NCBI RefSeq assembly: GCF_001447785.1
Contig: NW_015168723.1
Coordinates: forward strand, 248,001 to 298,739
Direction of reading: 5' to 3'
Source: Gekko japonicus
Taxonomy: Eukaryota
Length of the DNA stretch: 50,739 bases
Made by a program: the position numbers and the translations under genes. This document shows, piece by piece, positions 2,236 to 42,940 of the stretch. Positions within the stretch are counted from its first letter, which is position 1, and each line of letters opens with the position of its first letter. A model generated the notes under the pieces. It was not told the origin of the DNA. It made no database searches and saw nothing but the letters and a program-made list of their open reading frames with translations.

Positions 2236-2885
2236 TCCCCCAGGTGCCACCCCCAAATCTACAGGAATATCCCAACCCTGCCCAGCCAGGATTCTTGTTA
2301 TGATGAGCCAGGAATGAAGCCTCCATGTCCAGAGGCAGTGTACCTCTGAACTCCAGTTGATGGAGTAGGGTTGCCGACCTCCAGATAGTAGCTGGAGATC
2401 TCCTGCTTTTACAACTGATCTCCAGGTGACAGAGATCAATTCATGTGGAGAAAATGGCTGCTTTGGAAGGTGGATTCTTTGGCATTATATCCTATTGAAA
2501 TACCTCCCCTATTCAGGTTCCACCCCCCCAAAATCTCCAGGTATTTGCCAACCTGAAGCTGGCAACCCTGTGCTGGGGGTGGCGTTGGTGTCTTCAGATC
2601 TTGCTTTGGAGCTTCCCAGGTATGGTTGCTGTTGGGAGCAGAATGCTGGGCCAGTCGGACCCTGGGTCTTATCCAGAAGGGCAGTCTGTTATGTTTCGAG
2701 TTCTGTGACGAATTGGGGCTCAGCCCTTCTTTTTAGTTCCAGCTGGGGACATCCCAGGAAGCTTCTTGAACAAAGCAAGAAGGAACCCCTGTGTATTTCT
2801 TAAAAAGGCTATCATTGTTGAGTCAAAACCAATATTCCCGGGGGGGGGGGGGGGGAGAGTTAAATTCCAGTTCCTTATTCTTACT

Positions 2886-3255
2886 GCGGTAGCTCAAGTG
2901 GTTTAGACGCTGAACTGCAGGCTGTGGAAGGTCGGTAGTTCAGCAGTTTGAGACCCAAGTGCGCCGCATGACGGAGTGAGCTCCCGTCTCTAGTTCCAGC
3001 TCCTGCCAACCTAGCAGTTCGAAAGCAAGAAATTGCAAGTAGATCAATAGGGACCACTTCATTGGGAAGGTAACAGCGTTCCGCGCGCCTTGGTGTTTAG
3101 TCATGCCGGCCACACGACCACGGAAATGTCTTCGGACAGCGCTGGCTCTTCGACTTTGAAACGCAACCCTAGAGTCGGATTCGACTGGCTTTCGAGCAAA
3201 GGAACCTTTACGGATTCAACTGGCTTTCGAGCAAGGGAACCTTTACCTATACCTA
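2886..3255 (+). mobile_element. Sauria SINE (other copies at about 21283-21605 -, 27911-28250 -, 29670-29815 -, 47965-48312 +)
   Basis: AGCTCCTGCCAACCTAGCAGTTCGAAAGCA core, GTCATGCCGGCCACATGACC motif and (ACCTTT)n tail. Confidence 0.85.
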
Positions 3256-4534
3256 TTCTTACTTGTATATCTGCATACCTAGCTGCCTCTCGCTCTCTCT
3301 GTGCATGTTTTCTAATTATAAGTCCTGGGAATGAATATTGTTGAGAGAAGATGTATAGCCCTACTCTGAAGAATACTTAACTGAAATTAGACCAAAATAC
3401 TGCCCTTAGTCTAAGATTATATAGTCAGTTATATTGTTTACCAAACACATTCCTATAAACATAGACATGCAAAGGTTGTAATGGATAAATGTTCTAAATA
3501 AATAAAGTACTCGTGCCAAAGTTCAGTTCTAATTATTTCCATATCAGTTTCTTCTTGTGTATGTTTAGTCCAAGCGTAGCAACTGTCAAGGCTTCCAAAG
3601 GGCCAGCTAAAGATCCCTGTTTCCGCCCTTTCTCAAGGGAAACCTGGCTGGCAGTCAAATCAATCTTGTCAGATTTATTTGTAGAATTCTGTTAACCAAC
3701 TTCAATCCATCTCAGTGTAAAGTTCTTTGCTGTAGCTTGCAATATCTCTGTGTTGCCCTGTTGTTATCTTTATTTAAACCTTTTATCCATTATAACCTTT
3801 GCATGCTTATATTTATATGAACATGTTTGGTAGACAATATAATTGACTATACAATCTTAACACTGCGTAATTAGATCACGGCTGTATTTTGTTTCTTGAC
3901 TGTTTTTCCCGTGATCTCTCGTGTATTCCCACCTGGCATTTGGCTACCCTAGGTATAGGTGTGTTCCTGTGTGTATTGTTTCTGCTGTTATTTAAATTAT
4001 TAAGATTTGTGTCCTATTTTTTTGACCTCAGCAACCTCAGAGCAGTTCTGTAAAAAAATAAAATACAACCCCCTTGCTTAGTTGGCACTCAGGAACAATG
4101 TTGAGTCCAAGCTCCCGTGGATGTCCTGGATGGGTGACATCAGTCTCTTCACCAGTGATCATATAATGATATCACAAACAGAGATCATTGGCCTTTCTGG
4201 CTGGCTGCTCCAGCTTGTCTCTTTCCTTGAGGCATTCAGAGCCCTTGGACTGTTTAACTTTTAGTCGCAAAACCCCTTCCATTGAGGCTCTGAGATCCAG
4301 AGTTCAGACTCCAGCAGGAGAGGTCTTGCTAGTCACATGGAGCTGTGGGACTTGGATGACAGCAGCAGTTCGTATAGCACAACCGTTACTTCTGACTCAG
4401 AGGTATTTCTCCGCAGGACCCCAGTTCGAAATTTCCTCCCAGGGGTGTGTTCAAAGTTTCCTTTCTCCCTGTAATAAGAGCATCTGAGTTTGCCTTTCTA
4501 CTATGACATTTCCAGATGGGTTAGTTGTCTTAAG

Positions 4535-5623: not shown

Positions 5624-5813
5624 NNNNNNNNNNNNNNNNNNNNNNNNNNNNNNNNNNNNNNNNNNNNNNNNNNNNNNNNNNNNNNNNNNNNNNNNNNNNN
5701 NNNNNNNNNNNNNNNNNNNNNNNNNNNNNNNNNNNNNNNNNNNNNNNNNNNNNNNNNNNNNNNNNNNNNNNNNNNNNNNNNNNNNNNNNNNNNNNNNNNN
5801 NNNNNNNNNNNNN
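5624..5813. other. Assembly gap (others at 25307-25573, 42075-42215, 45734-45982)
   Basis: Runs of N. Confidence 1.
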
Positions 5814-7828: not shown

Positions 7829-8669
7829 GTAAGAGCATCCAACCACCAGGCTCCTAAGCTTGCAAAGGGGGGGGGGGCTGGAATGCGTCATCCTCTAGCA
7901 TTTCACATTTAATTTCTTTTCTAATGTGGTGGATGATTAAAGCACACCCTTGAGAGAGCTAATAAGGAGACAGGTTGTCGACACTGGACTGGGAAGACCT
8001 GGGTTCAGATACTGGGTCCTCCAGGATGCTCAGTGCAATCTTGGGCAAGTCGCTTTCAGCTTTGAAACGTATATGATTTTTCTGCATTGAACTCTGCCTT
8101 TTCCCCCCAATGGGGATCCAAAGTGCCGTGCATCGTTCTCCATTTTAGCCTCACAACAACCCTGTGAAGTGGATCAGGCAGAGAGGGCGTGCCTGGCCTC
8201 AGGTCACCCAGCAAGCTTTCCTGCCAGAGTGGGGATTCAGACCTGGGTCTCTTGGATCCTAGTCCAACACTCTACCACAATTCCACAGGGCCTGCAAGAC
8301 GGAGCTCTTCCGCCAAGCGTTCGAGCAGACGGGATAACATCAACTGAGTAAGCTAGGCCCTTAAATCCACCCAGCAAGCTTTCCTGCCAGAGTGGGGATT
8401 CAAACCTGGGTCTCTTGGATCCTAGTCCAACACTCTACCACAATTCCACAGGGCCTGCAAGACGGAGCTCTTCCGCCAAGCGTTCGAGCAGACGGGATAA
8501 CATCAACTGAGTAAGCTAGGCCCTTAAATCCACCCTGGCCGCCTGTCTTAATATCCTTGCTTATATGGAGGAATGATGGACACAGGAGCCAATTACCAGC
8601 CGTACAGCGAGCGCTGACTCTACGGTGGTTGATTAGAACAGTTCTGGTCATCCTACCTTACATAGCACC

Positions 8670-9332: not shown

Positions 9333-10109
9333 GTAGGTGTCCAAAACCGAAACGCGGGTGGAGAACTCAAAGGGGGAGGGGGGGACCCAAATGCCCATCT
9401 GCTCCCTCCCTCATTGCTGAATCTTCTGCCCCCCGAATGTATTGGAACCCTTTGGGGGCGGGACAGGTTGCAACCTTTTAAAATAGATAAATATTCTCAA
9501 TAGATTAGCTCAAATCAGAGAATGCAAAGCAGTGTATCTTCCAGGTTGCAGAGGAAAATCTGATGTGCCCCAAGGACTCCCGAGGTGGGCTACAATGCAG
9601 TAAATCAGTGACATCCAATGCTCCCTCTAATCTTTGGAGTCCTGTGAGCAAAAATTCTACTTTGTGAGATACCGGCATTAAAGTTGTGAGCAAGCAATTT
9701 GGCTGCTGCATAAATGAGTTTGCTCTGGAGCCCTCCTTCCTGAGCTAAGACAAAAATGTGGGAGCCAGAGGCTAAACAACAGTGAGCTAGCTCACACTAA
9801 CTCAGTTTAGAGGGAACACTGGTGATACCAACAAAGAGCCAAGGGATCAAAGTGCGATGCCCTAAAAAGAGGTTGTAGAACAATAAGACTAACCCCCCAA
9901 TGGGATGCAGCCAGATGTACCAGGGAACTTATTCGATCTCCACTTCTCTGTTACGCCGCCTCCAAACTGTCAGTTATTCAGGAGCGTTGTGTCTATTTAG
10001 TAAGTTTCAGGTGGGAGGCCGTGTTGATCTGCAGTAGGAGAGCAAGATTTTAATTCAGTAGCACCTAAAAGATCTCCAGGGGACAAGCTTTTAAGAGTCA
10101 AAGCTCCCT

Positions 10110-10545
10110 TCATAAGAACATAAGAGAAGCCAGTGTTGGATCAGGCCAATGGCCCATCCAGTCCAACACTCTTGTGTCACACAGTGGCCAAAAATACCAG
10201 GTGCCATCAGGAGGTCGAGCAGTGCGGCCAGGACACTAGAAGCCCTCCCACTGTTGCCCCCCAGCACCAAGAAGACAGAGCATCCCTTGCCCCAGACTGA
10301 GAGTTCCTCTCTATACCTTGTGGCTAATAGCCACAGATGGATTTCTGCTCCATATGTTTATCCAGTTCCCTCTTGAAGCTGTCCATGCTTGTAGCCTCCA
10401 CCACCTCCTGTGGCAGTGAATCCCACGTGTTCATCCCTCTTTGGGTGAAGAAGGACTTCCTTTTATCCGTTCTAACCCGACTGCTCAGCAATTTCATTGA
10501 GTGCCCACAAGGAGTTCTTGTATTGTGAGAAAGGGAGAAAAGGGA
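10110..10545 (-). mobile_element. 5'-truncated CR1 LINE inserted in a Penelope-like remnant
   Basis: CR1 tail, 3' UTR and the ORF2 C-terminal region shared with the 24790-25306 copy. Confidence 0.8.
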
Positions 10546-12428: not shown

Positions 12429-12994
12429 ATGTTTGGCTGTCTGTGGTAAGTGAATGGAACCCTGTGCTTGCTCAGTCACTCAGAGTTATTCAGAGGAATA
12501 TTGAATTAGCCATGCTGGTTCAGACCAACGCTTCATCTAACCCAGCATCCCGTTTCCAGCTTTGACCCGTCAGATGCCACACCGAAGGCGATATCCCTCA
12601 CTTACAACTATTCCCCAGCATTTGACGATCAGAGGTTTTCTGCTTCTGAACCCAGAGGACCCATTTAGCTACCATGGCCAATAGCCAACGTTAGATCTCT
12701 CCGCCATAAATCTAAGCCCCTTTGCAGCCCATCTAAAGCACCTTTCCACCACCCCATCTCGTGGCCCTAAGTTCCGCAAGTCAGCTGTGCCCATGGTATG
12801 AATTAGCATTTCCTTTTGCCTGTCCTGAATCTGCTGCCAGTCAGTTTCATGGGGTGATCTGGTATTATGGGAGAAGGAGAAAAGTTTCTATCTGCTGTCT
12901 TCCCACCGTGCATAATGTTGGAGACCACCTTGCCCCTTTGACGAGGCCAGCCCCTAACGCTGAAGGAAGAGGCCAGCAGGTGCTTATACATTGG

Positions 12995-13000
12995 TTTATT
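12995..13000 (-). terminator. CRYAB: Candidate CRYAB polyadenylation signal AATAAA
   Basis: TTTATT on +, about 130 nt downstream of the CRYAB stop. Confidence 0.65.
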
Positions 13001-13128
13001 TGTCAGTAAACAAGCTCATCTGCGGATCTTAGCACAAATAAATAAGAGCAGCCGGTCGGTGGGACTGCTTGCTGCGTACAGACAGAAAGGCTTTCTTGGA
13101 TATAAAAGAGTGGGTCTCAATGAGCTGT

Positions 13129-13332
13129 TTACTTCCTTTGTCCGCCCGCTAGGGCAGGTTTTTCCTCCCGGGTGATGGCGATGGTGCGCTCCGGCATCTC
13201 CGTTGGTTTTCTTGGTCCATTCACCGTCAGGACACCATCAGAAGAGAGGGAGGAAGTGATGGAGAGGGGATCCACATCACCTGGGATCTTGTATTTCCTG
13301 TTGAACTCTCTGGCTACGAAGCCTTGTTCATC
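13129..13332 (-). CDS. CRYAB: alphaB-crystallin exon 3 ([67 protein letters not shown])
   Basis: Hand translation of the minus strand (absent from the ORF track). Acceptor ...CCCCAACAAG, phase 0; TAA at 13131-13129. Clear match to the CRYAB C-terminal half. Confidence 0.95.
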
Positions 13333-13507
13333 CTTGTTGGGGGGGGGAGACAGTTAAACCAAATGTGTCATTTTGTGGTTTTCCAAGACGGTGTACACAG
13401 AATTCCTGCCACGCAAGCACTGACCAATCCCATACCCATCTAGCCGCGTGTATTCTCCAACCATGAACACATGAAGCTGCCTTATGCCAAATCAGACCAT
13501 CAATCCA

Positions 13508-14285
13508 TCATAAGAACATAAGAAGCCAGTGTTGGGTCAGGCCAATGGCCCATCCAGTCCAACACTCTGTCACACAGGGGCCAAAAACACCAGGGGCCAT
13601 CAGGAGGTCCAGCAGTGGGGCCAGGACTCTAGAAGCGGATTACAGACTCCTTTCCCTTCCCTTCCCCACAGCAGACACCCTGTGAGGTGGGTGGGGCTGA
13701 GAGAGCTCTGACAGAAACTGCTGTTTTTCAAGAAACAGCTCTGACAGAACTATGGCTTGCCCAAGGTCATCCAGCCAGGTGCAAGTGGAGGAGTGGGGGA
13801 ATCAAACCCGGTTCTCCCAGATTAGAGTCTGCCTGCACTTCACCACGACACCAAACTGGCTCTCAAGGCCCTTACAAGCAAGGGATAACAGAGCAGTGCC
13901 GACATCTCCGTCTTTGATGGGCATCCTTGTTTCAAAAGGCTCTGCTCTGCTTTTACCTCCGGGCCTAGAGCCTCGACCCCCACTGACCTGTCGTTCCTCG
14001 TGTTTCCCATGGACTTCGATCATATCTCCAAGAACCTTGACTTTTAACTCCTCGGGAGAGAAATGCTTCACGTCCACATTTACAGAGAATTTGTCCTTAT
14101 CCAGTCGCATCTGCTGACAAAACAGTCTGGTTAGGGCAATCGTACTGATAAAAAAAACATTTTGTGTGTGTTCCCTACTTGTGGCTAATCGCCACTGATG
14201 GACCTCTGCTCCATATGTTTATCTACAAGCCGTCCATGCTTGTAGCTGCCACCACCTCCTGCGGCAGTGAATCCCATGTGTTGAT
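13508..14285 (-). mobile_element. CR1 3' fragment split by the CRYAB exon-2 duplicate (CR1 parts 13508-13636 and 14170-14285)
   Basis: CR1 sequence stops at CTAGAAGC and resumes at GTTCC..CTTGTGGCTAA, collinear with intact copies apart from roughly 60 missing bp. Confidence 0.8.
13988..14110 (-). CDS. CRYAB: Second copy of CRYAB exon 2 (exon 2b); whether it is spliced in is unknown
   Basis: Same 41-aa peptide as 16377-16499 with one synonymous change (AAG/AAA). Branch point CCCTAAC, acceptor CAGCAG and donor GTCAGT are all intact. Confidence 0.6.
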
Positions 14286-16376
14286 GTGTGTCAAAGTCAG
14301 TGTTGTTACTCAGACTGGCAGCAGTTCTCCAGGCAGGGGTCTTGCGCATCACCTAGTGCCAGATTTTCTAAAAAAAACTGGAGATGCCAGGGATTGAACC
14401 TAGGACTTTCTGCATGCCAAGATGATGCTGCACCACTGAGCCACGGTGTCCTGGTGTGAAGGTCCCAGCCCCACCCCTGCACTCACAGACCTTGAAGGGA
14501 GCCAGAGGGTTGTCAAAAGAAAAAGCAGTTAAAAGCGTCTTGCGGCTCAGGGAGGCCTTGCCAGCGTCTCCCAGGCTTGCGGCTGGATTACAGCTGGCCA
14601 GGGAGGAAAAGCTTCTGGGAGAGACCCAGAGGGCTAGGGAGAGCAACAGGGAACCCGCGAGCAGGAGAGAGGGATTCACGTGTCTGCCAGCCCCCCCTCC
14701 TCCCGCATTATCGGAGGCCACTGTGAACCTCCCTAGCAAAAAAGTACTGGAGGACTCATCTGCACCCAGTCCGCAGCCTGCAGACACAGGACCAGACCAG
14801 TGTTCCCCCTAAGCTCACAATTTTTTAGCCTCCGGCTCTCACATTTTTGTCTTAGCGCACGAAGGAGGGTTGGAGAGCAAACTAGTTTATGCAGCAGCCA
14901 AATCGCTGGCTCACAACTTTCATGCCAGTGGTTCACAAAGTAGAATTTTTGCTCACAAGAGTCCACGGCTTAGAGGGAGCATTGGACCTGACACATGGCT
15001 TTTGCGATGGGGAGAAACCAGGTGGGGCCTGCAGAACTCCCAAATTACAACTGACCTCCATAAGAATATAAGAGATGCCAATGTTGGATCAGGCCAAAGG
15101 CCCATCCAGTCCAACACTCTGTGTCACACAGTGGCCAGAAATACCAGGGGCCATCAGGAGGTCCACCAGTGGGGCCAGGACACTAGAAGCCCTCCCACTG
15201 TTGACCCCCCCCAAGCACCAAGAAGACAGAGCATCACTTGCCCCAGAGTCCCTATCTATACCTTGTGGCTAATAGCCACTGATGGACCTCTGCTCCATAT
15301 GCTTATCTAATTCCCTTTTGAAGCCGTCCAACCTATAGAGATCAGTTTCCCTGGAGAAAATGGCAACTTTGGCAGGGGGACTGTGTGGTATTATACCAGC
15401 TGAGCTCTTTCTCCTCCCCAACATCCACACCCCCACCCCCCAAATCAGGTATTTTCCTTCCCAGAAGTGGCAACCCAAACGAAACCACAGCAGATGGTGG
15501 ATTACAACTTCGAAGGTTCCTTCTCTTCTAAAGGTCCCTGCCAGGGTTCCCTCGAAACGGAGTTAGTGTGCGCTAGCTCACAGTTTTTCTAGCCTCCGGC
15601 TCACACATTTTTGTCTCCGCTCAGGACAGATGGCTCTAGAGCAAACTAATTCATGCGGTAGCCAAATCGCTCGCTCACAGCTTTAAGGCCGGTAGCTCAC
15701 AAAGTAGAATTTTTGCTCACAAGACTCCACAGCTTGGAGGGAGCGTTGGTCCCTGCAAGTGAGAATCTAGCGCAAGAGAGAGTTTTGTCTGCTGCGCTGT
15801 TGTTCGCTTTGCAGGGGGGTTTCAACAGAGGGGAGTGTGGCGACGTGCGATTCCCCATACCCCTCTGTCTGCAGTCTGAAGAGGCACAGTGTGTTCCTCA
15901 GTGTTCTACCCCCTCTTTCTCCTGCTTGTGTGAACCAGGCTTACGAAGAAGAAGAAGAGATTGGATTTATACCCCGCCCTTCACTACCCAGAGGAGTCTC
16001 AGAGCGGCTTACAGACTCCTTTCCCTTCCCCCTCCCCACAACAGACACCCTGCGAGGTAGGTGGGGCTGAGAGAGCTCTGGACAGAAACTGCTCTTTTCC
16101 AGGAACAGCTCTTATCAGAACTACGGCTTGCCCAAGGTCATCCAGCCAGGTGCAAGCGAAGGAGTGGGGGAATCAAACCCGGTTCTCCCAGATTAGAGTC
16201 CGCCTGCACTTCACCACGACACCAAACTGGCTCTCAAGGCCCTTACAAGCAAGGGATAACAGAGCAGTGCCGACATCTCCGTCTTTGATGGGCATCCTTG
16301 TTTCAAAAGGCTCTGCTCTGCTTTTCCTCCCGCCCTCGCCCCCACCTCCCGGCCTAGAGCCTCGACCCCCACTGAC

Positions 16377-16499
16377 CTGTCGTTCCTCGTGTTTCCCATG
16401 GACTTCGATCATATCTCCAAGAACCTTGACTTTTAACTCCTCGGGAGAGAAATGCTTCACGTCCACATTTACAGAGAACTTGTCCTTATCCAGTCGCAT
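16377..16499 (-). CDS. CRYAB: alphaB-crystallin exon 2, original copy ([41 protein letters not shown])
   Basis: Alpha-crystallin domain motif [14 protein letters not shown]...HGKHEERQ; 123 nt, phase 0-0, CAG acceptor and GTCAGT donor. Confidence 0.95.
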
Positions 16500-16688
16500 C
16501 TGCTGACAAAACAGTCTGGTTAGGGCAATCGTACTGATAAAAAAAACGTTTCATGTGTGTTGAAACGCTCACAACAGCTGGGCGTCAGACGTCAAACAAA
16601 TAGTTACGGAACTGGGTCTACCCAAGATGGAGTTCCTGGTAGTGCATACTGGAGAGCTGCTGAGTAGCCAATGTTGATCTCGATAGGC

Positions 16689-16885
16689 CAGCGGTTCTCA
16701 ACCTGTGGGTCGCGACCCCTTTGGGGGTCAAATGACCCTTTCACAGGGGTCGCCTAAGACCATCGGAAAACACAAATTTCCGATGGTCTTATGATAGCAA
16801 CGAAAATAATTTTATGGTTGGGGGTCACCACAACATGAGGAACTGTATTAAAGGGTCGCGGCATTAGGAAGGTTGAGAACCACTG
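16689..16885. mobile_element. SPIN/URR1-type hAT-Charlie MITE
   Basis: Ends CAGCGGTTCTCAACCTGTGGGTCGCGACCCC and GGGTCACCACAACATGAGGAACTGTATTAAAGGGTCGCGGCATTAGGAAGGTTGAGAACCACTG match the recalled SPIN/URR1 consensus; TSD CGATAGGC/CGATAGAC. Confidence 0.85.
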
Positions 16886-18925: not shown

Positions 18926-20427
18926 AGGATACTTGTTGTGTTTCCAAGACTGTGGCGTCATCCCACTTTGGAAACCTGCTTCAACTTTAACCTGGCCGTC
19001 TTTCAGATGTGGCGGACCCGATCCCCTCAGAAGTTCTCTTGTACCATTGAAACAAACCCTCTCGTGCAGCGCCCACTCATTTCAATGGGCTCGTTCGGTT
19101 TCCCAGTGCGGAAATTAGGCCCAAGGTAAGGCCTTTTCCACAAGCAATTCTGGAACTCGATTTTTGCTTTCATTTCCTGGGTCTGTCATTTGAAGGCTGA
19201 CTCTCCCTACAAACTTGAAATGGCTCTTTTTCGCCTTTTGGTTCTTGCCTGTGTTCATAGGGCTCCAGTTCCAGTCTAAAAACAGTTCTCATTACTGCTG
19301 GTGGAAAGAGTTGCTTTTAGTAGCCATGAAAAGAGGGAATGCAGATGGCGCTTATTGTTACCAATTTTTGTAGGTTGATTTTGTCATTTTAATTTTTTAA
19401 AATCTATTTATTCACTGAACTTTGTTCATCTGAATTCTCCACCTTTTTCCCCAGTGGGCACCCCAAGTAGCTGACATCACTCTGCTCTCTTCCAGTTTAT
19501 TTTCACAACATCCCTGCGAGGCAGGTTAGGTGGAGAGGGTGTGACTGGCCCAAGATCACCCAGCGAGCTTCCATGGCACCAGTGTGGATTCGAACCTGCG
19601 TCTCCCAGATCCTCGACCAACACCCTCCCCACAACACAGTATTGCTTCTCTCTTTTACAGCCACGTTAACATCACAGATTCTTACCTTAACCTTGATCTA
19701 AAAATCCAACAAATCAGTTGTTAAAGAGGTCAAGAAGGATTAATTAAGAAAAAGAAGAGATTGGATTCATACCCCACCCTTCACTATCCGAAGGAGTCTC
19801 AGAGTGGCTTACAATCTCCTTTCCCTTCCCTTCGCCACAACAGACACCCTGTGAGGTAGGCGGGGCCGAGAGAGCTCTTTCCAGAACTGTCCTTGAGAGA
19901 ACAGCTCTGAGAGAACTGTGACTGATCCAAGGTCACACCAGCAGCTGCATGTGGAGGAGTGGGGAATCAAACCCGGTTCTCCCAGGTTAGAGTCCGCGCA
20001 CTTAACCACTACACCAAACTGGCTCTTAATTAAGAAGAAGGGAAGAGATTGGGTTTATACCCCGCCCTTCACTACCCGAAGGAGTCTCAGAGTGGTTTAC
20101 AATCTCCTTTCCCCTCCCCTCCCCGCAACAGAGACCCTGTGAGGTAGGTGGGGCCGAGAGAGCTCTTTCCAGAACTGTCCTTGAGAGAACAGCTCTGAGA
20201 GAACTGTGACTGATCCAAGGTCACACCAGCAGCTGCAAGTGGAGGAGTGGGGAATCAAACCCGGTCCTCCCAGATTAGAGTCCGCACGCTTAACCACTAC
20301 ACCAAACTGGCTCTCTTAATTAATCAATAAAGACAGGGATTGTGACCGTGACCGGTAGTCCTGGGTCCATGACTGCTGGGGGTGGGAACCTGCTAAAGTG
20401 TGTTTAACCAGGAACAAGGAACGTTAC

Positions 20428-20625
20428 CTCTGAGAATCTGCTCTCTAGCCAGGTGGGGAGCCTTAAGAGGGAGGGTCTCAAGAGGAAAGAGCTGAGCGCC
20501 GAGGTGCTGGGGAAAAGCTCAGCTTCCACGAGGTGTTCTCCGAAGGCCTGGCTGAAGAGGCGGTTGGGCGACAGGGCGGACACAAGGGGCCTGCGGAAGA
20601 GAGGATGGTGAACGGTGATATCCAT
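20428..20625 (-). CDS. CRYAB: alphaB-crystallin exon 1 (MDITVHHPLFRRP...WLESRFSE)
   Basis: Typical MDI-HHP-RRP...FGEHL N-terminus; donor GAG|GTAACG at 20428/20427; 66 codons. Confidence 0.95.
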
Positions 20626-20687: not shown

Positions 20688-20765
20688 TTTTATACCCTGT
20701 CCGGCAGCAGGCCTTGCCCCGGCTGAACCCTCTGGAACCGTGATGTCAGGTGTTTTATTGTCCCT
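20688..20765 (-). promoter_or_regulatory. CRYAB: CRYAB proximal promoter: TATA box, HSE-like element and conserved AATAAAA-CCTGACATCAC block
   Basis: Minus-strand TATAAAA at 20694-20688; GTTCCAGAGGGTTCA at 20738-20724; ACAATAAAACACCTGACATCAC at about 20762-20740, resembling the recalled mammalian CRYAB proximal promoter. Confidence 0.75.
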
Positions 20766-24789: not shown

Positions 24790-25306
24790 TACATAAGAAC
24801 ATAAGAGATGCCAATGTTGGATCAGACCAAAGGCCCATCCTGTCCAACACTCTGTGTCACACAGTGGCCAGAAATACCAGTGCCATCAGGAGGTCCACCA
24901 GTGGGGCCAGGACATTAGAAGCCCTCCCACTGTTGACCCCCCCAAGCACCAAGAAGACAGAGCATCACTTGCCCCAGAGCCCCTATCTATACCTTGTGGC
25001 TAATAGCCACTGATGGACCTCTGCTCCATATGCTTATCTAATTCCCTTTTGAAGCCGTCCATGCTTGTAGCACCCACCACTTCCTGTGGCAGTGAATTCC
25101 ATGTGTTTATTACTCTTTGGTTGAAAAAGTACTTCCTTTTATCGGTTCTAACCCGACCGCTCAGCAGTTTCATGGAGTGCCCACGAGTTCTTGTATTGTG
25201 AGAAAGGGAGAAAAGTACCTCTTTCTCTACCTGCTCTTTCCCATGCATAATCTTATAAACCTCGATCATGTCACCCCTCAGTCATCGTTTCTCCAAGCTA
25301 AAGAGC
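24790..25306 (-). mobile_element. CR1 LINE, ORF2 C-terminus plus 3' UTR, running into a gap
   Basis: ORF 25000-25269 encodes MIEVYKIMHG...RTRGHSMKL...RKYFFNQRVINTWNSLP, the classic CR1 ORF2 end. Confidence 0.92.
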
Positions 25307-28300
25307 NNNNNNNNNNNNNNNNNNNNNNNNNNNNNNNNNNNNNNNNNNNNNNNNNNNNNNNNNNNNNNNNNNNNNNNNNNNNNNNNNNNNNNNNNNNNNN
25401 NNNNNNNNNNNNNNNNNNNNNNNNNNNNNNNNNNNNNNNNNNNNNNNNNNNNNNNNNNNNNNNNNNNNNNNNNNNNNNNNNNNNNNNNNNNNNNNNNNNN
25501 NNNNNNNNNNNNNNNNNNNNNNNNNNNNNNNNNNNNNNNNNNNNNNNNNNNNNNNNNNNNNNNNNNNNNNNNNCTCCTCCTCCTCCTCCTCCTTCTCATC
25601 ATGAAGCTGCTTTCAACTGAATCAGACCCTTGGTCCATCTAGGTCAGTCTTGTTTCTTCTGACTAGCAGCTTCCCTCCAGGGTCTCAGGCAGAGAAAGGT
25701 ACTACCTGATACTTTGAACTAGAGATGCCAGGGATTGAACCTGCGACCTTTCGCAAGCCAAGCGGGGTGTCAGACTCCTGCAACCATCAGTTCCCAACAG
25801 CTTTCTTCCAAAGAAGTAAAGTTTATCGAGACAGTGGATAGTTTGCTGATCTCATGGCATCTCATGTTAGAACTGGATAGATGCGCGCAAAGCAAGCGAT
25901 ACCCCTGAATTGGCCCAGGGCCAATGAGGACCCAGGTAAAAGCCCGCCAGAATAACAGGCCCCGGTTCCCAGGGGAAATACTACACCAGGGATTGAAGGT
26001 CAAGCATAGATAACAGAAACAGAGGTGACACAGAGGGAAAGAATCCTAACATTCCAGAGCAGGCACACACACACACACACACACCATGGCAGCCAGGACT
26101 AGCCAGAGGCCGAGCAGACAGCAGGTGTTTTGCCAGTCAGCCATGACCCCTGTGCAGATCCCTGCAGGAATCTTCTCAGTCCCCAGCAGCATCTCCAATT
26201 AAAAGGATAGGATCAGGGGTCGTTTCGTAGAAAAAGAGCTAGAGGAACTCATTAGCATAACTCATTAGCATATGCCACACCCCCTGACATCAGGGGCCCA
26301 GCGGTGGACCTGCAAGGCCGGCGGGAGTGCGAGGAAGCCCCGCCAAGGCCCTCCCTGGCCCCAGGCAGGCAGGGGTGGGGAGAGGCGGGGAGGAAGCAAC
26401 TTACCCTACCTCTTCTCCTGCCTCCTCCTGACAGAATGAGGGCCGGAAGCGGGGCTGACTAGCGATGGTGGCTAAAGAGAATCTCTAACCCCAGTGGCCA
26501 CAGGCAACATCAGGGGAAGGCCTTGACCTCCATGCCCCATTATTGGCCCTCCTGGTGGGCCACTACGTGATCCAGAAAAAATCCACAAAAAATGGAGAAC
26601 TGTATAGTGATTGCGCTTAAGAAGTTTTTAAACAGCAATTGTAGACTATAAAAGGACCAGGCAGCAGGTGATATGAAAGGCCTTTCACTGCCTGAGACCC
26701 TGGAGAGCTGCTGCCAGTCTGAGTAGACGATACTGACCTTGATGCACCGATGGTCTGATTCAGGTGTCATTTCATAGAAAAAGAGGTGCAGGAGCTCATT
26801 AGCATAGCTCATTAACATAACTGATTTGCGTATGCCACACCCCCTGACCTCACCGGAAGTGTGTCAGAAGGCAACACCCACCACTCAGGCACCACTGGAC
26901 TCTTTTCGATTGCTAGCTATTGTGGGGTGGGGGGGGCTGTGCAGATCTGCCCTCACAGAGGAGGGAGAGCTTGTACCTGAATAAACCTTGGCCTTAAAGG
27001 TGTCACTGGACTGTTTTGGATTGCTATGGGGAGGGCCTCTGCAACTTACCTGGCTGCTTCTTGCTCCGTGTGGCCCGGGGCTGCTGGGAGCAGGGGGCGG
27101 GGCTTGTTGCATGCCCCCGCCCCCTTGGCTCTTTACTGCCGGAGCTCCGCTCCTGTGCACTCCCGCAGGAAATGACCCCTGCTCTGATTCAGCATCAGGC
27201 ATCTTCACATGTTCATGTGAGAACATGTAGAGAGGAGCCCCGAGTGGCATAGTGAGGGGGAAGCGGGTTGGAGGCACACGGCAGCCCTCTGCCCCCTAGC
27301 TTCAGGTCCGGGCCCCAGAGGGCTGAGAGAGCGCAGCCCAGGCCGGCTCCCCCTTCTCCGGTTTCATCTTCTGTCCGCAAGGCAGACAGTCTGTCTTTGC
27401 ACCTGCTGCTCCAAAAGAGGCTCTCCTGTTTCATGCCAGGAAAAATATTTTTGCAAATATTAATAACTTTCTAATTGGCGTCATTGCGCAGGCAAAAGGG
27501 AGGCTATCTCCTGGCGGTCTGTTGACCACTTCTGCAGAGCAGAGCTTGGAGAAGTGCTCGATTGTCCTCGTGGCTCCTGGCGCAGCGGCCCTGTCGAGCT
27601 GCCTGCCGCCCTTCCCATTTTGTCAAGGGAAACAGAGGCTGAGGCCAACAGCCAAACTGGGCTTCGAACGTGTCTTTCTCCATACAAGTCTGATATCCCA
27701 AAACAGACAGATGCCTTCCTGGGAAGAGAGTCCCCCTGATTGTGACATTGGGCAATGGCCAACCACCTCTGCTTCTCACTTGCCTCGGAAGCCCCCTGCT
27801 GGGGTCCTCAGAAAGCGCTCTCTCCGCCCCACCTGCCTCACAGGGTGTCTGTTGCAGGGAGGGGAAGGGAAAGCAGATTGTAAGCTGCTCTGAGACTCCT
27901 CCTGGTAGTGAAAGGTAAAGGTTTCCCTTGCTCGAAAGCCAGTCGAATCCGGCTCTAGGGGGCAGTGCTCATCTCCATTTCCAAGCCGACGAGCCAGCGC
28001 TGTCCGAAGACGTTTCCGTGGTCATGTGGCCGGCATGACTGAACGCCAAGGCGCACGGAATGCTGTTACCTTCCCACCGAAGTGGTACCTATTTATCTAC
28101 TTGCAGTTTCTTGCTTTCGAACTGCTAGGGTGGCAGGAGCTGGGGCCAGGGACGGGAGCTCACTCCGTCACGCAACACTCGGGTCTCGAACTGCCGAACT
28201 ACAGACTTTCCTGTCTGCAGCTCAGCATCTTAACCTCTGAGCCACCTAGGTCCATGTGAAGGGCGGGGCATCAATCCAATCTCCTCCTCCTCCTCCTTTC

Positions 28301-40741: not shown

Positions 40742-42497
40742 TACCCTGTCCTATGTAAACATCACTGAAGTACCAACTGTAGAGGGAAAGGGTACTGTAC
40801 ATTTTCATCCTTTCTTTTTCCCCTTGTTCAGCCTGAATGCTTGAACAGACTATGTGTATTATTTTTATCTGTTTATTAAGCTTTCTTGTATTTTGAATGC
40901 TCTAAGCCTGATCTCTAGAAACAAACCATGCCTATTCAGTCTTGCTATCTGTAGTGCGATAACAGGGAGGGGCAGTGGGTAAGCTTGTCATCCTTGGAGC
41001 ACAATTGTTTGAAATGGCATATTAGTGATAGATTGCCCCCGTGCTAATTTATAGGAGTGTAGCAACTCGGCGGAGCCTCTAAAGGGTAGTGCAGGTACAG
41101 AACTCTAAGTGTGCAACTCCATTTAGTGGGAGCTACTTTCAATGTCTTTGGTAGCAGCAGTTGATAGCCTGGTTATTGTTGGTACCCTCCGGGAGTAAAG
41201 GAAAGAGGTGGCATTGTCAAGCAGAGACTTAGGACAGCCACAAGGTTCTCCACCCTACTGGGGACCAAACCAAAGGAAAGGTTGGGGGGGAGTGCTTGAG
41301 GGTTCATTCATGAACAAAAACTGGAATAGGGGGGGAAAGGACACCTTGATGGTGGCAAGGACGTTCAGAACTCCCAAGGCAACCTCAAATAAACAGTGTT
41401 TGGAGCAAAATACCACGCTTTATTGTGCAAAATTCCATCTTTGTTTTCTGGCCCGAGGATGCTTATGGTGCAATTTTTTAAAAAATCTGATAACACATTT
41501 TCTCAAAGTCAATCCTAACCGCCATTCTAAGGAGAACACCTGCAAGTAATATGTCCTTAAGAGACAGATACAATGTGCAATTTAATACAGAAACTCTTAT
41601 ATTTGACTGGAGAAACTGATGCAACCTTTCCCACTGGCTACTTTCACTCAAAATCGTACTCCTTCAATTGCTTTTCCACCCTCGTAAAGGAGTACCCTAT
41701 GCTTTAATTTATTTTTCTGCTCAAAATCCACCCCCCAGCTCTGTTCAGACAGACAGACAGACAGATAGATAGACAGAGTAAGTCAGTTGGTGTAGTGGTT
41801 AGAGTGTGATAGATGGGTGAGTGGGTGGACGGATAGAAGAAGAAGAAGAAGATTGGATTTATACCTCGCTCTTCACTCAGAATCTCAGAGCAGCTTACAA
41901 ACTCCTTTCCCTTCCCCTCCCCACAACAGACACCCTGTGAGGTAGGTGGGGCTGAGAGAGCTCTTTCCAGAACTGTCCTTGAGACAACAGCTCTGACAGA
42001 ACTATGGCTTGCCCAGGGTCATCCAGCAGCTGCGAGTGAAGGAGTGGGGAATCAAACCCGGTTCTCCCAGATTANNNNNNNNNNNNNNNNNNNNNNNNNN
42101 NNNNNNNNNNNNNNNNNNNNNNNNNNNNNNNNNNNNNNNNNNNNNNNNNNNNNNNNNNNNNNNNNNNNNNNNNNNNNNNNNNNNNNNNNNNNNNNNNNNN
42201 NNNNNNNNNNNNNNNGTGGTTAGAATGTGATGGATGGATGGATGGATGGATGGAATCTTTCTCTTATGCGTGTCTGCCATATCACATCTACGTACCCCCA
42301 ACCCTCAACCCACCTGAGGAGACTAAGGCCGGGCTGAAATTGGCTAGTCCCATTTCAGCTTCTGGGCAAGACACAGCGAAGTAACAAAAGTTCCACCAAA
42401 CAGTTCCATCGCTTTGGTCCTGACCCTACGGGGCACATCAACCGTGGCCCTTGTTTGGCGATACGTTGTGACAACGGTCTCTTCCCGTCTGTTTTAG

Positions 42498-42940
42498 GCA
42501 TTTCCCCCGGAGACATCCTGGCTCCCACGTTGTACCACGGCTATTACATCCGGCCTCGGATCAACAAGCAGCTCGACCGCGGGATCTCGGAGGTCACCCT
42601 CAACGACCACAAATTCCAGGTCTTCCTCGACGTCTGCCACTTCACCCCCGACGAGATCGCCATCCGCACGGTGGACAACCTCCTGGAGGTGACAGCTCAG
42701 CACTCGCAGAAAGCCGACCGACACGGCTTCATCTCCCGGGAGTTCACCAGGACCTACATCCTCCCCTTGGACGCCGACCCTTTGCTGGTCAAAGCCACGG
42801 TGACCCATGACGGCATCCTGAGCATAGAGGCCCCGCGGACAGGGGAGGAAAGGAAAGCCAAGGTCATGGATGTGAAAATCACGTGCCAAGAAGAGCCGGC
42901 GGGGCACGAGGGGAACTCCAAGGAGAAGTCCCAGTCCTGA
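42498..42940 (+). CDS. HSPB2: HSPB2 exon 2 (alpha-crystallin domain)
   Basis: Acceptor ctgttttag ends at 42497 and is phase-1 compatible. PTLYHGYYIRPR...FLDVCHFTPDEI.IRTVDNLLEV...RHGFISREF.RTY.LP...HDGIL.IEAPR matches HSPB2. TGA ends at 42940; 178 aa in total. Confidence 0.96.

What the first reader, a model, noticed from the sequence alone, without database searches (positions are those of the whole stretch)
13988..16499. Tandemly duplicated, splice-competent exon 2 in CRYAB: possible elongated alphaB-crystallin
Seen: exon 2 occurs at 16499-16377 and again at 14110-13988. The copies differ by one synonymous base, and both have branch point CCCTAAC, CAG acceptor and GTCAGT donor. The exon is 123 nt and phase 0-0. 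The 2.27-kb spacing imposes no steric exclusion. Inference: including both gives an in-frame 215-aa protein with a tandem 41-aa repeat of the N-terminal half of the alpha-crystallin domain; using either alone gives the same 174-aa protein. This would be natural exon duplication caught early in a normally strict three-exon small heat-shock gene. It could produce a new lens or muscle chaperone isoform, or require a mechanism that enforces single inclusion.
Basis: partly seen in the sequence, partly recalled or inferred. Interest (0 to 1): 0.88.

Follow-up and report, generated by a model that had tools for sequence, protein, structure and literature searches.

The report
Second CRYAB exon 2: likely misassembly
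The gecko alphaB-crystallin gene does show its middle exon twice in this assembly, but the second copy looks like the animal's other allele pasted into a repeat during short-read assembly, and nothing shows that a longer crystallin is made.

Summary
CRYAB lies on the minus strand, and exon 2 (123 nt, phase 0-0) occurs at 16499-16377 and 14110-13988. The copies differ by one synonymous base and have identical splice signals.

The duplication is not tandem. Copy A is part of a 536-bp block (13637-14172) set into a CR1-like repeat in intron 2, where it replaces about 58-71 nt of that repeat.

- **Source:** the window matches Gekko japonicus CRYAB exactly. That species' published genome is an Illumina-only SOAPdenovo/SSPACE assembly.
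- **Independent DNA:** run X1 has one contig, at single-copy depth, running from native intron 1 straight into an exon-2 block with copy A's variants. So "copy A" exists as an ordinary allele at the native site, in a genome with one exon 2.
- **RNA:** in run X22, exon 2 depth fits one inclusion per transcript. That animal probably lacks the duplicate, and the 2-2 junction rows were not shown.
- **Annotation:** two NCBI models give the same 174-aa protein. No 215-aa form was found.

Best reading: a false duplication of two alleles, made at a closed gap (about 0.6). The rival is a real, unfixed templated insertion (about 0.35). The source animal's reads, which would decide, were not available.

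The scan had already noted this block on this same window; no note on other DNA was used.

The parts
20428..20625 (-). CRYAB exon 1 coding part (66 codons); TATAAAA at 20688-20694
   Evidence: Pfam PF00525 E=1.7e-23. Donor GAG|GTAACG read. Identical to residues 1-66 of P0001.
16377..16499 (-). Exon 2, copy B (native position; AAG at 16479-16481)
   Evidence: Aligns to residues 68-108 of solved alphaB-crystallin 2klr_A.
13988..14110 (-). Exon 2, copy A (AAA at 14090-14092)
13129..13332 (-). Exon 3 coding part (67 codons plus stop)
   Evidence: RNA depth of about 2500-3300 in X22.
15993..16561 (-). Block X_B. It holds 62 nt of intron 1, exon 2, about 140 nt of intron and a SINE. The SINE (16235 to 15946) runs on to its own (TTC)n tail.
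13637..14172 (-). Block X_A, the second copy of the same block. Its SINE (13864-13637) is cut short at the 3' end.
13503..13636 (.). One half of the CR1-like repeat that X_A interrupts
   Evidence: Collinear with copies at 10107-10434, 15055-15330 and 24792-25107.
14173..14285 (.). The other half of the same repeat; about 58-71 nt of the repeat is missing between the halves
16326..16343 (-). 18-nt G-rich stretch present only in copy B, 33 nt after the donor
   Evidence: Absent from the X1 contig, which was laid on copy A with 0 gaps.

Best explanation
The second exon 2 is most likely a false duplication of the two alleles of one locus (a 'heterotype' false duplication). The sequenced male would be heterozygous for two versions of the exon-2 block that differ by about 2%. 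The main contig kept version B. Reads of version A did not align to that contig, were assigned to a nearby gap inside a CR1-like repeat, were assembled there and closed the gap. The real gene then has three exons and makes the 174-aa protein.

Shown: the anatomy of the block; a single copy in an independent genome; version A at the native site in that genome; the assembly method.

Inferred: the way the reads were misplaced. One concrete route is contamination of a roughly 2-kb mate-pair library by ordinary paired-end fragments. After read reversal, such a pair places its unaligned mate one insert plus one fragment away on the same strand, about 2.3-2.4 kb. The observed offset is 2371-2389 nt in direct orientation.
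For: 1. In DNA run X1, one 415-nt contig at depth 86 (other single-copy pieces 57-88) runs from native intron 1 (16641-16538) straight into the exon-2 block. The block part fits copy A (14149-13839) with 1 mismatch and no gap. No X1 contig lies on exon 2B. An unbroken contig at single-copy depth means one copy in that genome.
2. X1 differs from the window by 2.1% elsewhere (29/1396) but by 0.3% in X_A (1/311; p=0.03). X_A is therefore a known allele of the native block, not a diverged paralogue.
3. Across the stretch the X1 contig covers, the three sites read directly (14090, 13961, the 18-nt indel) have X_A in the X1 state and X_B in the other. The three 5'-edge sites are inferred to follow the same pattern from the mismatch count.
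4. The window equals G. japonicus CRYAB exactly. That species' published genome is Illumina-only, built with SOAPdenovo plus SSPACE and mate-pair libraries of 2 kb or more, from one male (PMC4673495).
5. X_A lies inside a high-copy repeat and ends inside a SINE. Contigs of this assembly break in such places; two of the window's N runs abut SINE sequence.
6. A-B divergence rises from 1.7% in the unique part to 3.6% and then about 12% along the SINE. That fits repeat reads from elsewhere being mixed in.
7. False duplications of alleles are the main duplication error of older assemblies and create false exon gains (PMC9516828).
8. As an unchecked lead only: scan notes list many similar 'templated patches' and microhomology deletions in conserved exons of this same assembly.
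Against: There is no N run between or beside the copies; the nearest are at 5624-5813 and 25307-25573. Ko et al. list gaps between duplicates as a hallmark of false ones.

Both junctions are clean, with only 2-3 nt of exact microhomology (13-14 nt imperfect at 13636/13637). A k-mer assembler should need real reads across them.

Identical stretches of 125-128 nt inside the block would collapse in a de Bruijn graph, so a plain leftover second-allele contig cannot explain it. A gap-closing step must be invoked, and the paper's main text does not name one.

The flanks next to X_A (12900-14405) are also closer to X1 (0.9%) than the upstream part is (3.0%, p=0.002). That would fit X_A really lying on an X1-like chromosome.

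X1 is another animal, about 2% diverged. Its single copy does not prove that the reference animal has one.
Confidence: 0.6

Rival explanations
1. The duplication is real but young and not fixed. A 536-bp copy of the exon-2 block was written into a break in the CR1-like repeat 2.4 kb downstream. The mechanism would be replication template switching or break repair with microhomology, with loss of about 58-71 nt at the target. It arose on a chromosome of the X1-like type, and the assembled sequence is a mosaic or a recombinant with the B type. The signals are identical and the intron is 2.27 kb, so the default outcome, as with disease-causing exon duplications, would be inclusion of both copies. 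That would give a 215-aa protein repeating residues 67-107. The extra G-runs after copy B's donor might favour copy B.
For: The sequence is contiguous, without N, across both junctions. The target deletion plus short microhomology is a usual signature of templated insertions. X_A and its immediate flanks share the same affinity to the X1 haplotype. The truncated SINE shows that X_A was copied from X_B-type DNA and was not an independent SINE insertion.
Against: X1 has a single copy. X_A is an allele of the native block rather than a copy of the neighbouring X_B, so an extra recombination or assembly mosaic is needed. The steep divergence gradient in the SINE part is unexplained. No 215-aa product was found in databases. 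The assembly type is known for false exon gains.
Confidence: 0.35
2. It is an established, species-wide pair of alternative exons, spliced so that exactly one is used (mutually exclusive exons born by exon duplication).
For: NCBI lists two differently named models, XP_015271074.1 'X1' and XP_015271075.1 'X2', with the same 174-aa sequence. This would fit one model per exon copy, but it is automatic annotation of this same assembly.
Against: The second copy is absent from X1. The copies encode the same peptide, so nothing is gained. No feature that could enforce exclusion is visible, because the intron is long and the frame is kept.
Confidence: 0.03

Closest known systems
False heterotype duplications in older genome assemblies (Ko et al. 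2022, PMC9516828)
   Same: Two versions of one locus differ by allele-level divergence and are placed in series on one scaffold, creating a false exon gain. The second version is absent from an independent genome.
   Different: There is no gap between the copies. The extra copy is small (536 bp), lies 1.8 kb away and is embedded in a repeat with clean junctions. Read depth in the source animal was not testable.
Tandem exon duplication giving mutually exclusive exons (known from my own knowledge: Kondrashov and Koonin 2001; Letunic et al. 2002)
   Same: Two exons of equal length and phase lie next to each other in one gene.
   Different: Those pairs are old, diverged and conserved across species. 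Here the peptides are identical and the second copy is missing in another genome.
Templated insertions by microhomology-mediated template switching (FoSTeS/MMBIR) or break repair
   Same: A direct copy of DNA from 2.4 kb away, with a target-site deletion and short microhomology at both joints.
   Different: The existence of the joints in real DNA is unproven.
Rodent alphaA-insert crystallin (own knowledge: an extra 23-residue exon between exons 1 and 2 of CRYAA)
   Same: A lengthened alpha-crystallin made by including an extra in-frame exon.
   Different: That exon is a distinct sequence with proven protein. Here the extra exon would repeat part of the folded domain, and no product is shown.

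Membership tests
CRYAB / HSPB5 gene | N-terminal crystallin domain plus alpha-crystallin (HSP20) domain, split over three coding exons | tested here: met
   PF00525 on exon 1 and PF00011 on exons 2 and 3. Exon 2 aligns to residues 68-108 of solved alphaB-crystallin.
CRYAB / HSPB5 gene | Identity to an annotated CRYAB | tested here: met
   Exons 1, 2 and 3 equal the 174-aa G. japonicus protein P0001.
False heterotype duplication | The two copies are alleles of one locus | tested here: met
   X1 carries copy A's variants at the native position, joined to intron 1.
False heterotype duplication | Half read depth on each copy in the source animal | not testable with these tools
   No run of the source animal was offered; the best DNA holder shares 0.48 of the words.
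False heterotype duplication | Assembly gap between or beside the copies | tested here: not met
   N runs occur only at 5624-5813, 25307-25573, 42075-42215 and 45734-45982. A gap that was closed would leave no trace.
False heterotype duplication | Single copy in an independent genome | tested here: met
   One unbroken X1 contig, depth 86 against 57-88 for single-copy pieces.
Templated insertion (real structural variant) | Direct copy of nearby DNA with target deletion and microhomology | tested here: met
Templated insertion (real structural variant) | Junctions present in reads of the carrier | not testable with these tools
Both junctions lie in high-copy repeats that swamp the tables.
Mutually exclusive duplicated exons | Both exons present across individuals or species | tested here: not met
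   X1 has one.
Mutually exclusive duplicated exons | Transcripts carry one or the other exon, never both | tested here: inconclusive
   The splice joints were not among the 15 rows shown. Depth fits one inclusion in X22, but that animal probably has one copy.

The most novel reading that the evidence does not exclude
The insert is real and segregates in Gekko japonicus, and carriers splice both exon 2 copies into the message. They would then make a 215-aa alphaB-crystallin with residues 67-107 (the first strands of the alpha-crystallin domain) repeated. That would be a natural in-frame exon duplication in a strictly three-exon small heat-shock gene, seen at birth.
Probability: 0.15. Interest if true: 0.55.

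Novelty: not a real feature. Interest (0 to 1): 0.18.

Why it matters
If it is an artefact, the value is practical. The G. japonicus reference would contain allele fragments pasted into closed gaps without any N to mark them. Such patches can mimic exon duplications, templated insertions and gene damage, so similar findings from this assembly need read-depth checks.

If it is real, it would be a rare look at a newborn in-frame exon duplication in a chaperone whose mutants cause cataract and myopathy. It would also be a natural test of how identical neighbouring exons are spliced.

Tried and rejected
1. Read laying with two RNA and two DNA runs. The joint, loose-end and difference tables were filled by repeat-derived contigs, so the exon 2-2, 2B-3 and 2A-3 junction rows were not shown. 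The cap is one call.
2. Run X4 (organism B) matched only repeats and said nothing. X23 had no CRYAB expression.
4. A search of 1.84 billion representatives with the exon-2 peptide found only distant multi-domain small heat-shock proteins with several stretches. None was a near-identical double-exon CRYAB.
5. A search with P0001 found longer reptile CRYAB models of 210-247 aa. These are N-terminal extensions, not exon repeats.
6. The literature holds no paper on a gecko CRYAB exon duplication.
7. I rejected the idea that copy A is the original: only copy B has native intron 1 upstream and a complete SINE.
8. I rejected an independent SINE insertion at copy A: its SINE lacks the 3' tail.
9. I rejected capture during CR1 retrotransposition: the repeat copy is 8-15% from its relatives, while X_A is 0.3% from a living allele.
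10. I rejected a plain leftover second-allele contig from the de Bruijn graph: identical stretches of 125-128 nt would collapse.
Exons were searched one by one by reference.

Full report
**What is there**

CRYAB lies on the minus strand.
- Exon 1 coding part: 20625-20428, 66 codons, Pfam Crystallin N-terminal, E=1.7e-23.
- Exon 3 coding part: 13332-13129, 67 codons plus stop.
- Exon 2 (123 nt, 41 codons, HSP20) occurs twice, at 16499-16377 (copy B) and 14110-13988 (copy A).

The two exon copies differ at one base, AAG versus AAA, both lysine. The last 48 nt of upstream intron are identical, including CCCTAAC and a CAGCAG acceptor. So are the GTCAGT donor and the 26 nt after it. One exon 2 gives 174 aa and both give 215 aa. 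Exon 2 aligns to residues 68-108 of solved alphaB-crystallin, the first part of the alpha-crystallin domain.

**Anatomy of the repeat**

Only about 540 bp is repeated: 16561-15993 (X_B) and 14172-13637 (X_A). The block holds 62 nt of intron 1, exon 2, about 140 nt of intron and the head of a tRNA-derived SINE.
- X_B has native intron 1 upstream, and its SINE runs on to its own (TTC)n tail at 15946.
- X_A's SINE is cut short at its 3' end.
- X_A is flanked on both sides by the two halves of one CR1-like repeat, 13503-13636 and 14173-14285. These halves are collinear with copies at 10107-10434, 15055-15330 and 24792-25107. About 58-71 nt of that repeat is missing.

So X_A is the derived copy. 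It is a direct insert 2371-2389 nt downstream of its source, not a tandem duplication. Exact microhomology at the joints is 2-3 nt, with 13-14 nt of imperfect match at 13636/13637.

A and B differ at five substitutions and one 18-nt G-rich indel in the roughly 300-nt unique part (1.7%). They differ by 3.6% in the first half of the SINE and by about 12%, with several indels, in its last 116 nt.

**Where the window comes from**

The exons equal, residue for residue, the 174-aa 'alpha-crystallin B chain' of Gekko japonicus. That exact sequence carries two NCBI accessions, XP_015271074.1 'isoform X1' and XP_015271075.1 'isoform X2'. Two differently named models with one protein would fit one model per exon copy. 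This is my inference, and both models are automatic annotation of the same assembly.

The published genome of this species was built from Illumina reads of one male. The authors used SOAPdenovo and SSPACE, with mate-pair libraries of 2 kb and more (PMC4673495). The odd-sized N runs of the window fit such scaffolds, and two of them abut SINE sequence.

**Independent DNA**

No run of the source animal was offered. The best DNA holder shares 0.48 of the sampled words, which corresponds to about 2% divergence. That run, X1, covers all unique parts of the stretch at single-copy depth (57-88).

One 415-nt X1 contig (depth 86) is laid with its first 104 nt on native intron 1 (16641-16538, 4 mismatches). 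Its other 311 nt lie on copy A (14149-13839, 1 mismatch, no gap). No X1 contig lies on exon 2B. Three things follow.
- That genome has one exon 2. A second copy would put a fork at the block's edge and break the contig, and depth would be about double.
- That single copy sits at the native place.
- It carries copy A's states: AAA, C at 13961 and no 18-nt stretch. The three 5'-edge sites are probably A-like too, because three of the four mismatches in the intron-1 part are unaccounted for and exactly three A/B differences lie there. That last point is an inference; the rows were not printed.

X1 differs from the window by 2.1% in other unique pieces but by 0.3% in X_A (p=0.03). 'Copy A' is therefore a living allele of the native block.

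**RNA**

Run X22 expresses CRYAB strongly, with exon 3 depth of about 2500-3300. It differs from both window copies at three exon-2 sites, one of which gives Met96Val, and at two exon-3 sites. It is therefore another lineage.

At nt 93 of exon 2 the depth is 304 on copy A plus 793 on copy B, 1097 in total. Near the start of exon 3 it is 1477. That fits one inclusion per transcript, not two.

Copy A's share of reads (0.21-0.28) is at or below what reads that miss the variable base would give when split between the copies (0.22 over the exon, 0.36 at nt 93). No AAA-bearing reads are needed to explain it. However, this animal probably has a single copy.

The 2-2 junction therefore remains untested.

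**Databases and literature**

- The exon-2 peptide searched against 1.84 billion representatives found no near-identical two-stretch protein.
- The G. japonicus protein searched against the larger collection found no 215-aa gecko form. Longer reptile models are N-terminal extensions.
- No paper on such a duplication was found.
Exons were searched singly by reference.

**Weighing**

For an artefact:
- The extra copy is the other allele of the native block, in consistent opposite phase to the main contig.
- It sits inside a high-copy repeat and ends in a SINE, which is where short-read contigs break.
- Its repeat part looks like a blend of SINE reads.
- An independent genome has one copy.
- The assembly type is known for false exon gains from unmerged alleles (PMC9516828).

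A workable route exists, though it is inferred. SOAPdenovo-style gap closing collects reads that fail to align to contigs and whose mates are anchored nearby. Allele-A reads are exactly such reads. Ordinary paired-end contaminants of a roughly 2-kb mate-pair library would displace them by one insert plus one fragment on the same strand. That matches the 2.37-2.39-kb direct offset.

Unchecked notes of this scan list many 'templated patches' and microhomology deletions in conserved exons of the same assembly. I use this only as a lead. It did move me from about even odds towards an artefact.

Against an artefact:
- There is no N at or between the copies.
- The joints are clean, and a k-mer method should need real reads across them.
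- The neighbouring flanks (12900-14405) share X_A's closeness to X1: 0.9% against 3.0% upstream, p=0.002.

These points fit the rival: a real, young, unfixed templated insertion on an X1-like chromosome.

**Verdict**

- False duplication of two alleles: about 0.6.
- Real private or polymorphic insertion: about 0.35.
- Established alternative-exon pair: about 0.03.

Even if the insert is real, it is not a species-wide feature, and no product has been seen. The source animal's read depth and junction reads, or a simple PCR across the repeat, would settle it.

Noticed in passing
window 42479-42922 (+): An HSPB2-like open frame, 34% identical to CRYAB over 148 residues. It lies head-to-head with CRYAB but about 21.8 kb from its start; from my own knowledge the pair is about 1 kb apart in mammals. 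The N run at 42075-42215 lies just upstream and may hide its 5' end.
   Followed up: partly
window 8205-8535: A 163-bp unit repeated exactly twice in tandem, with one mismatch (99.4%), in SINE-like sequence. It could be a real young duplication or another assembly slip.
   Followed up: partly
window 16500-16505 and 14111-14116 (-): Both exon 2 copies have a CAGCAG (NAGNAG) acceptor. Use of the upstream AG would add one glutamine.
   Followed up: no
window 14023/16412, 14018/16407, 14030/16419, 13150, 13318: All RNA reads of run X22 differ from the window at these coding sites, one of which gives Met96Val. The animals under this species label are about 1.5% apart in CRYAB coding sequence, so they are either a divergent population or a sister species.
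   Followed up: partly
window 12900-16856: Divergence from DNA run X1 changes from 0.9% (12900-14405) to 3.0% (14477-16856), p=0.002. The assembled sequence looks like a mosaic of two deep haplotypes, or a recombinant.
   Followed up: partly
window 19754-20026 and 20042-20314: Two SINE copies lie in tandem with a 288-nt period and 94% identity, just downstream of CRYAB exon 1 in intron 1.
   Followed up: no
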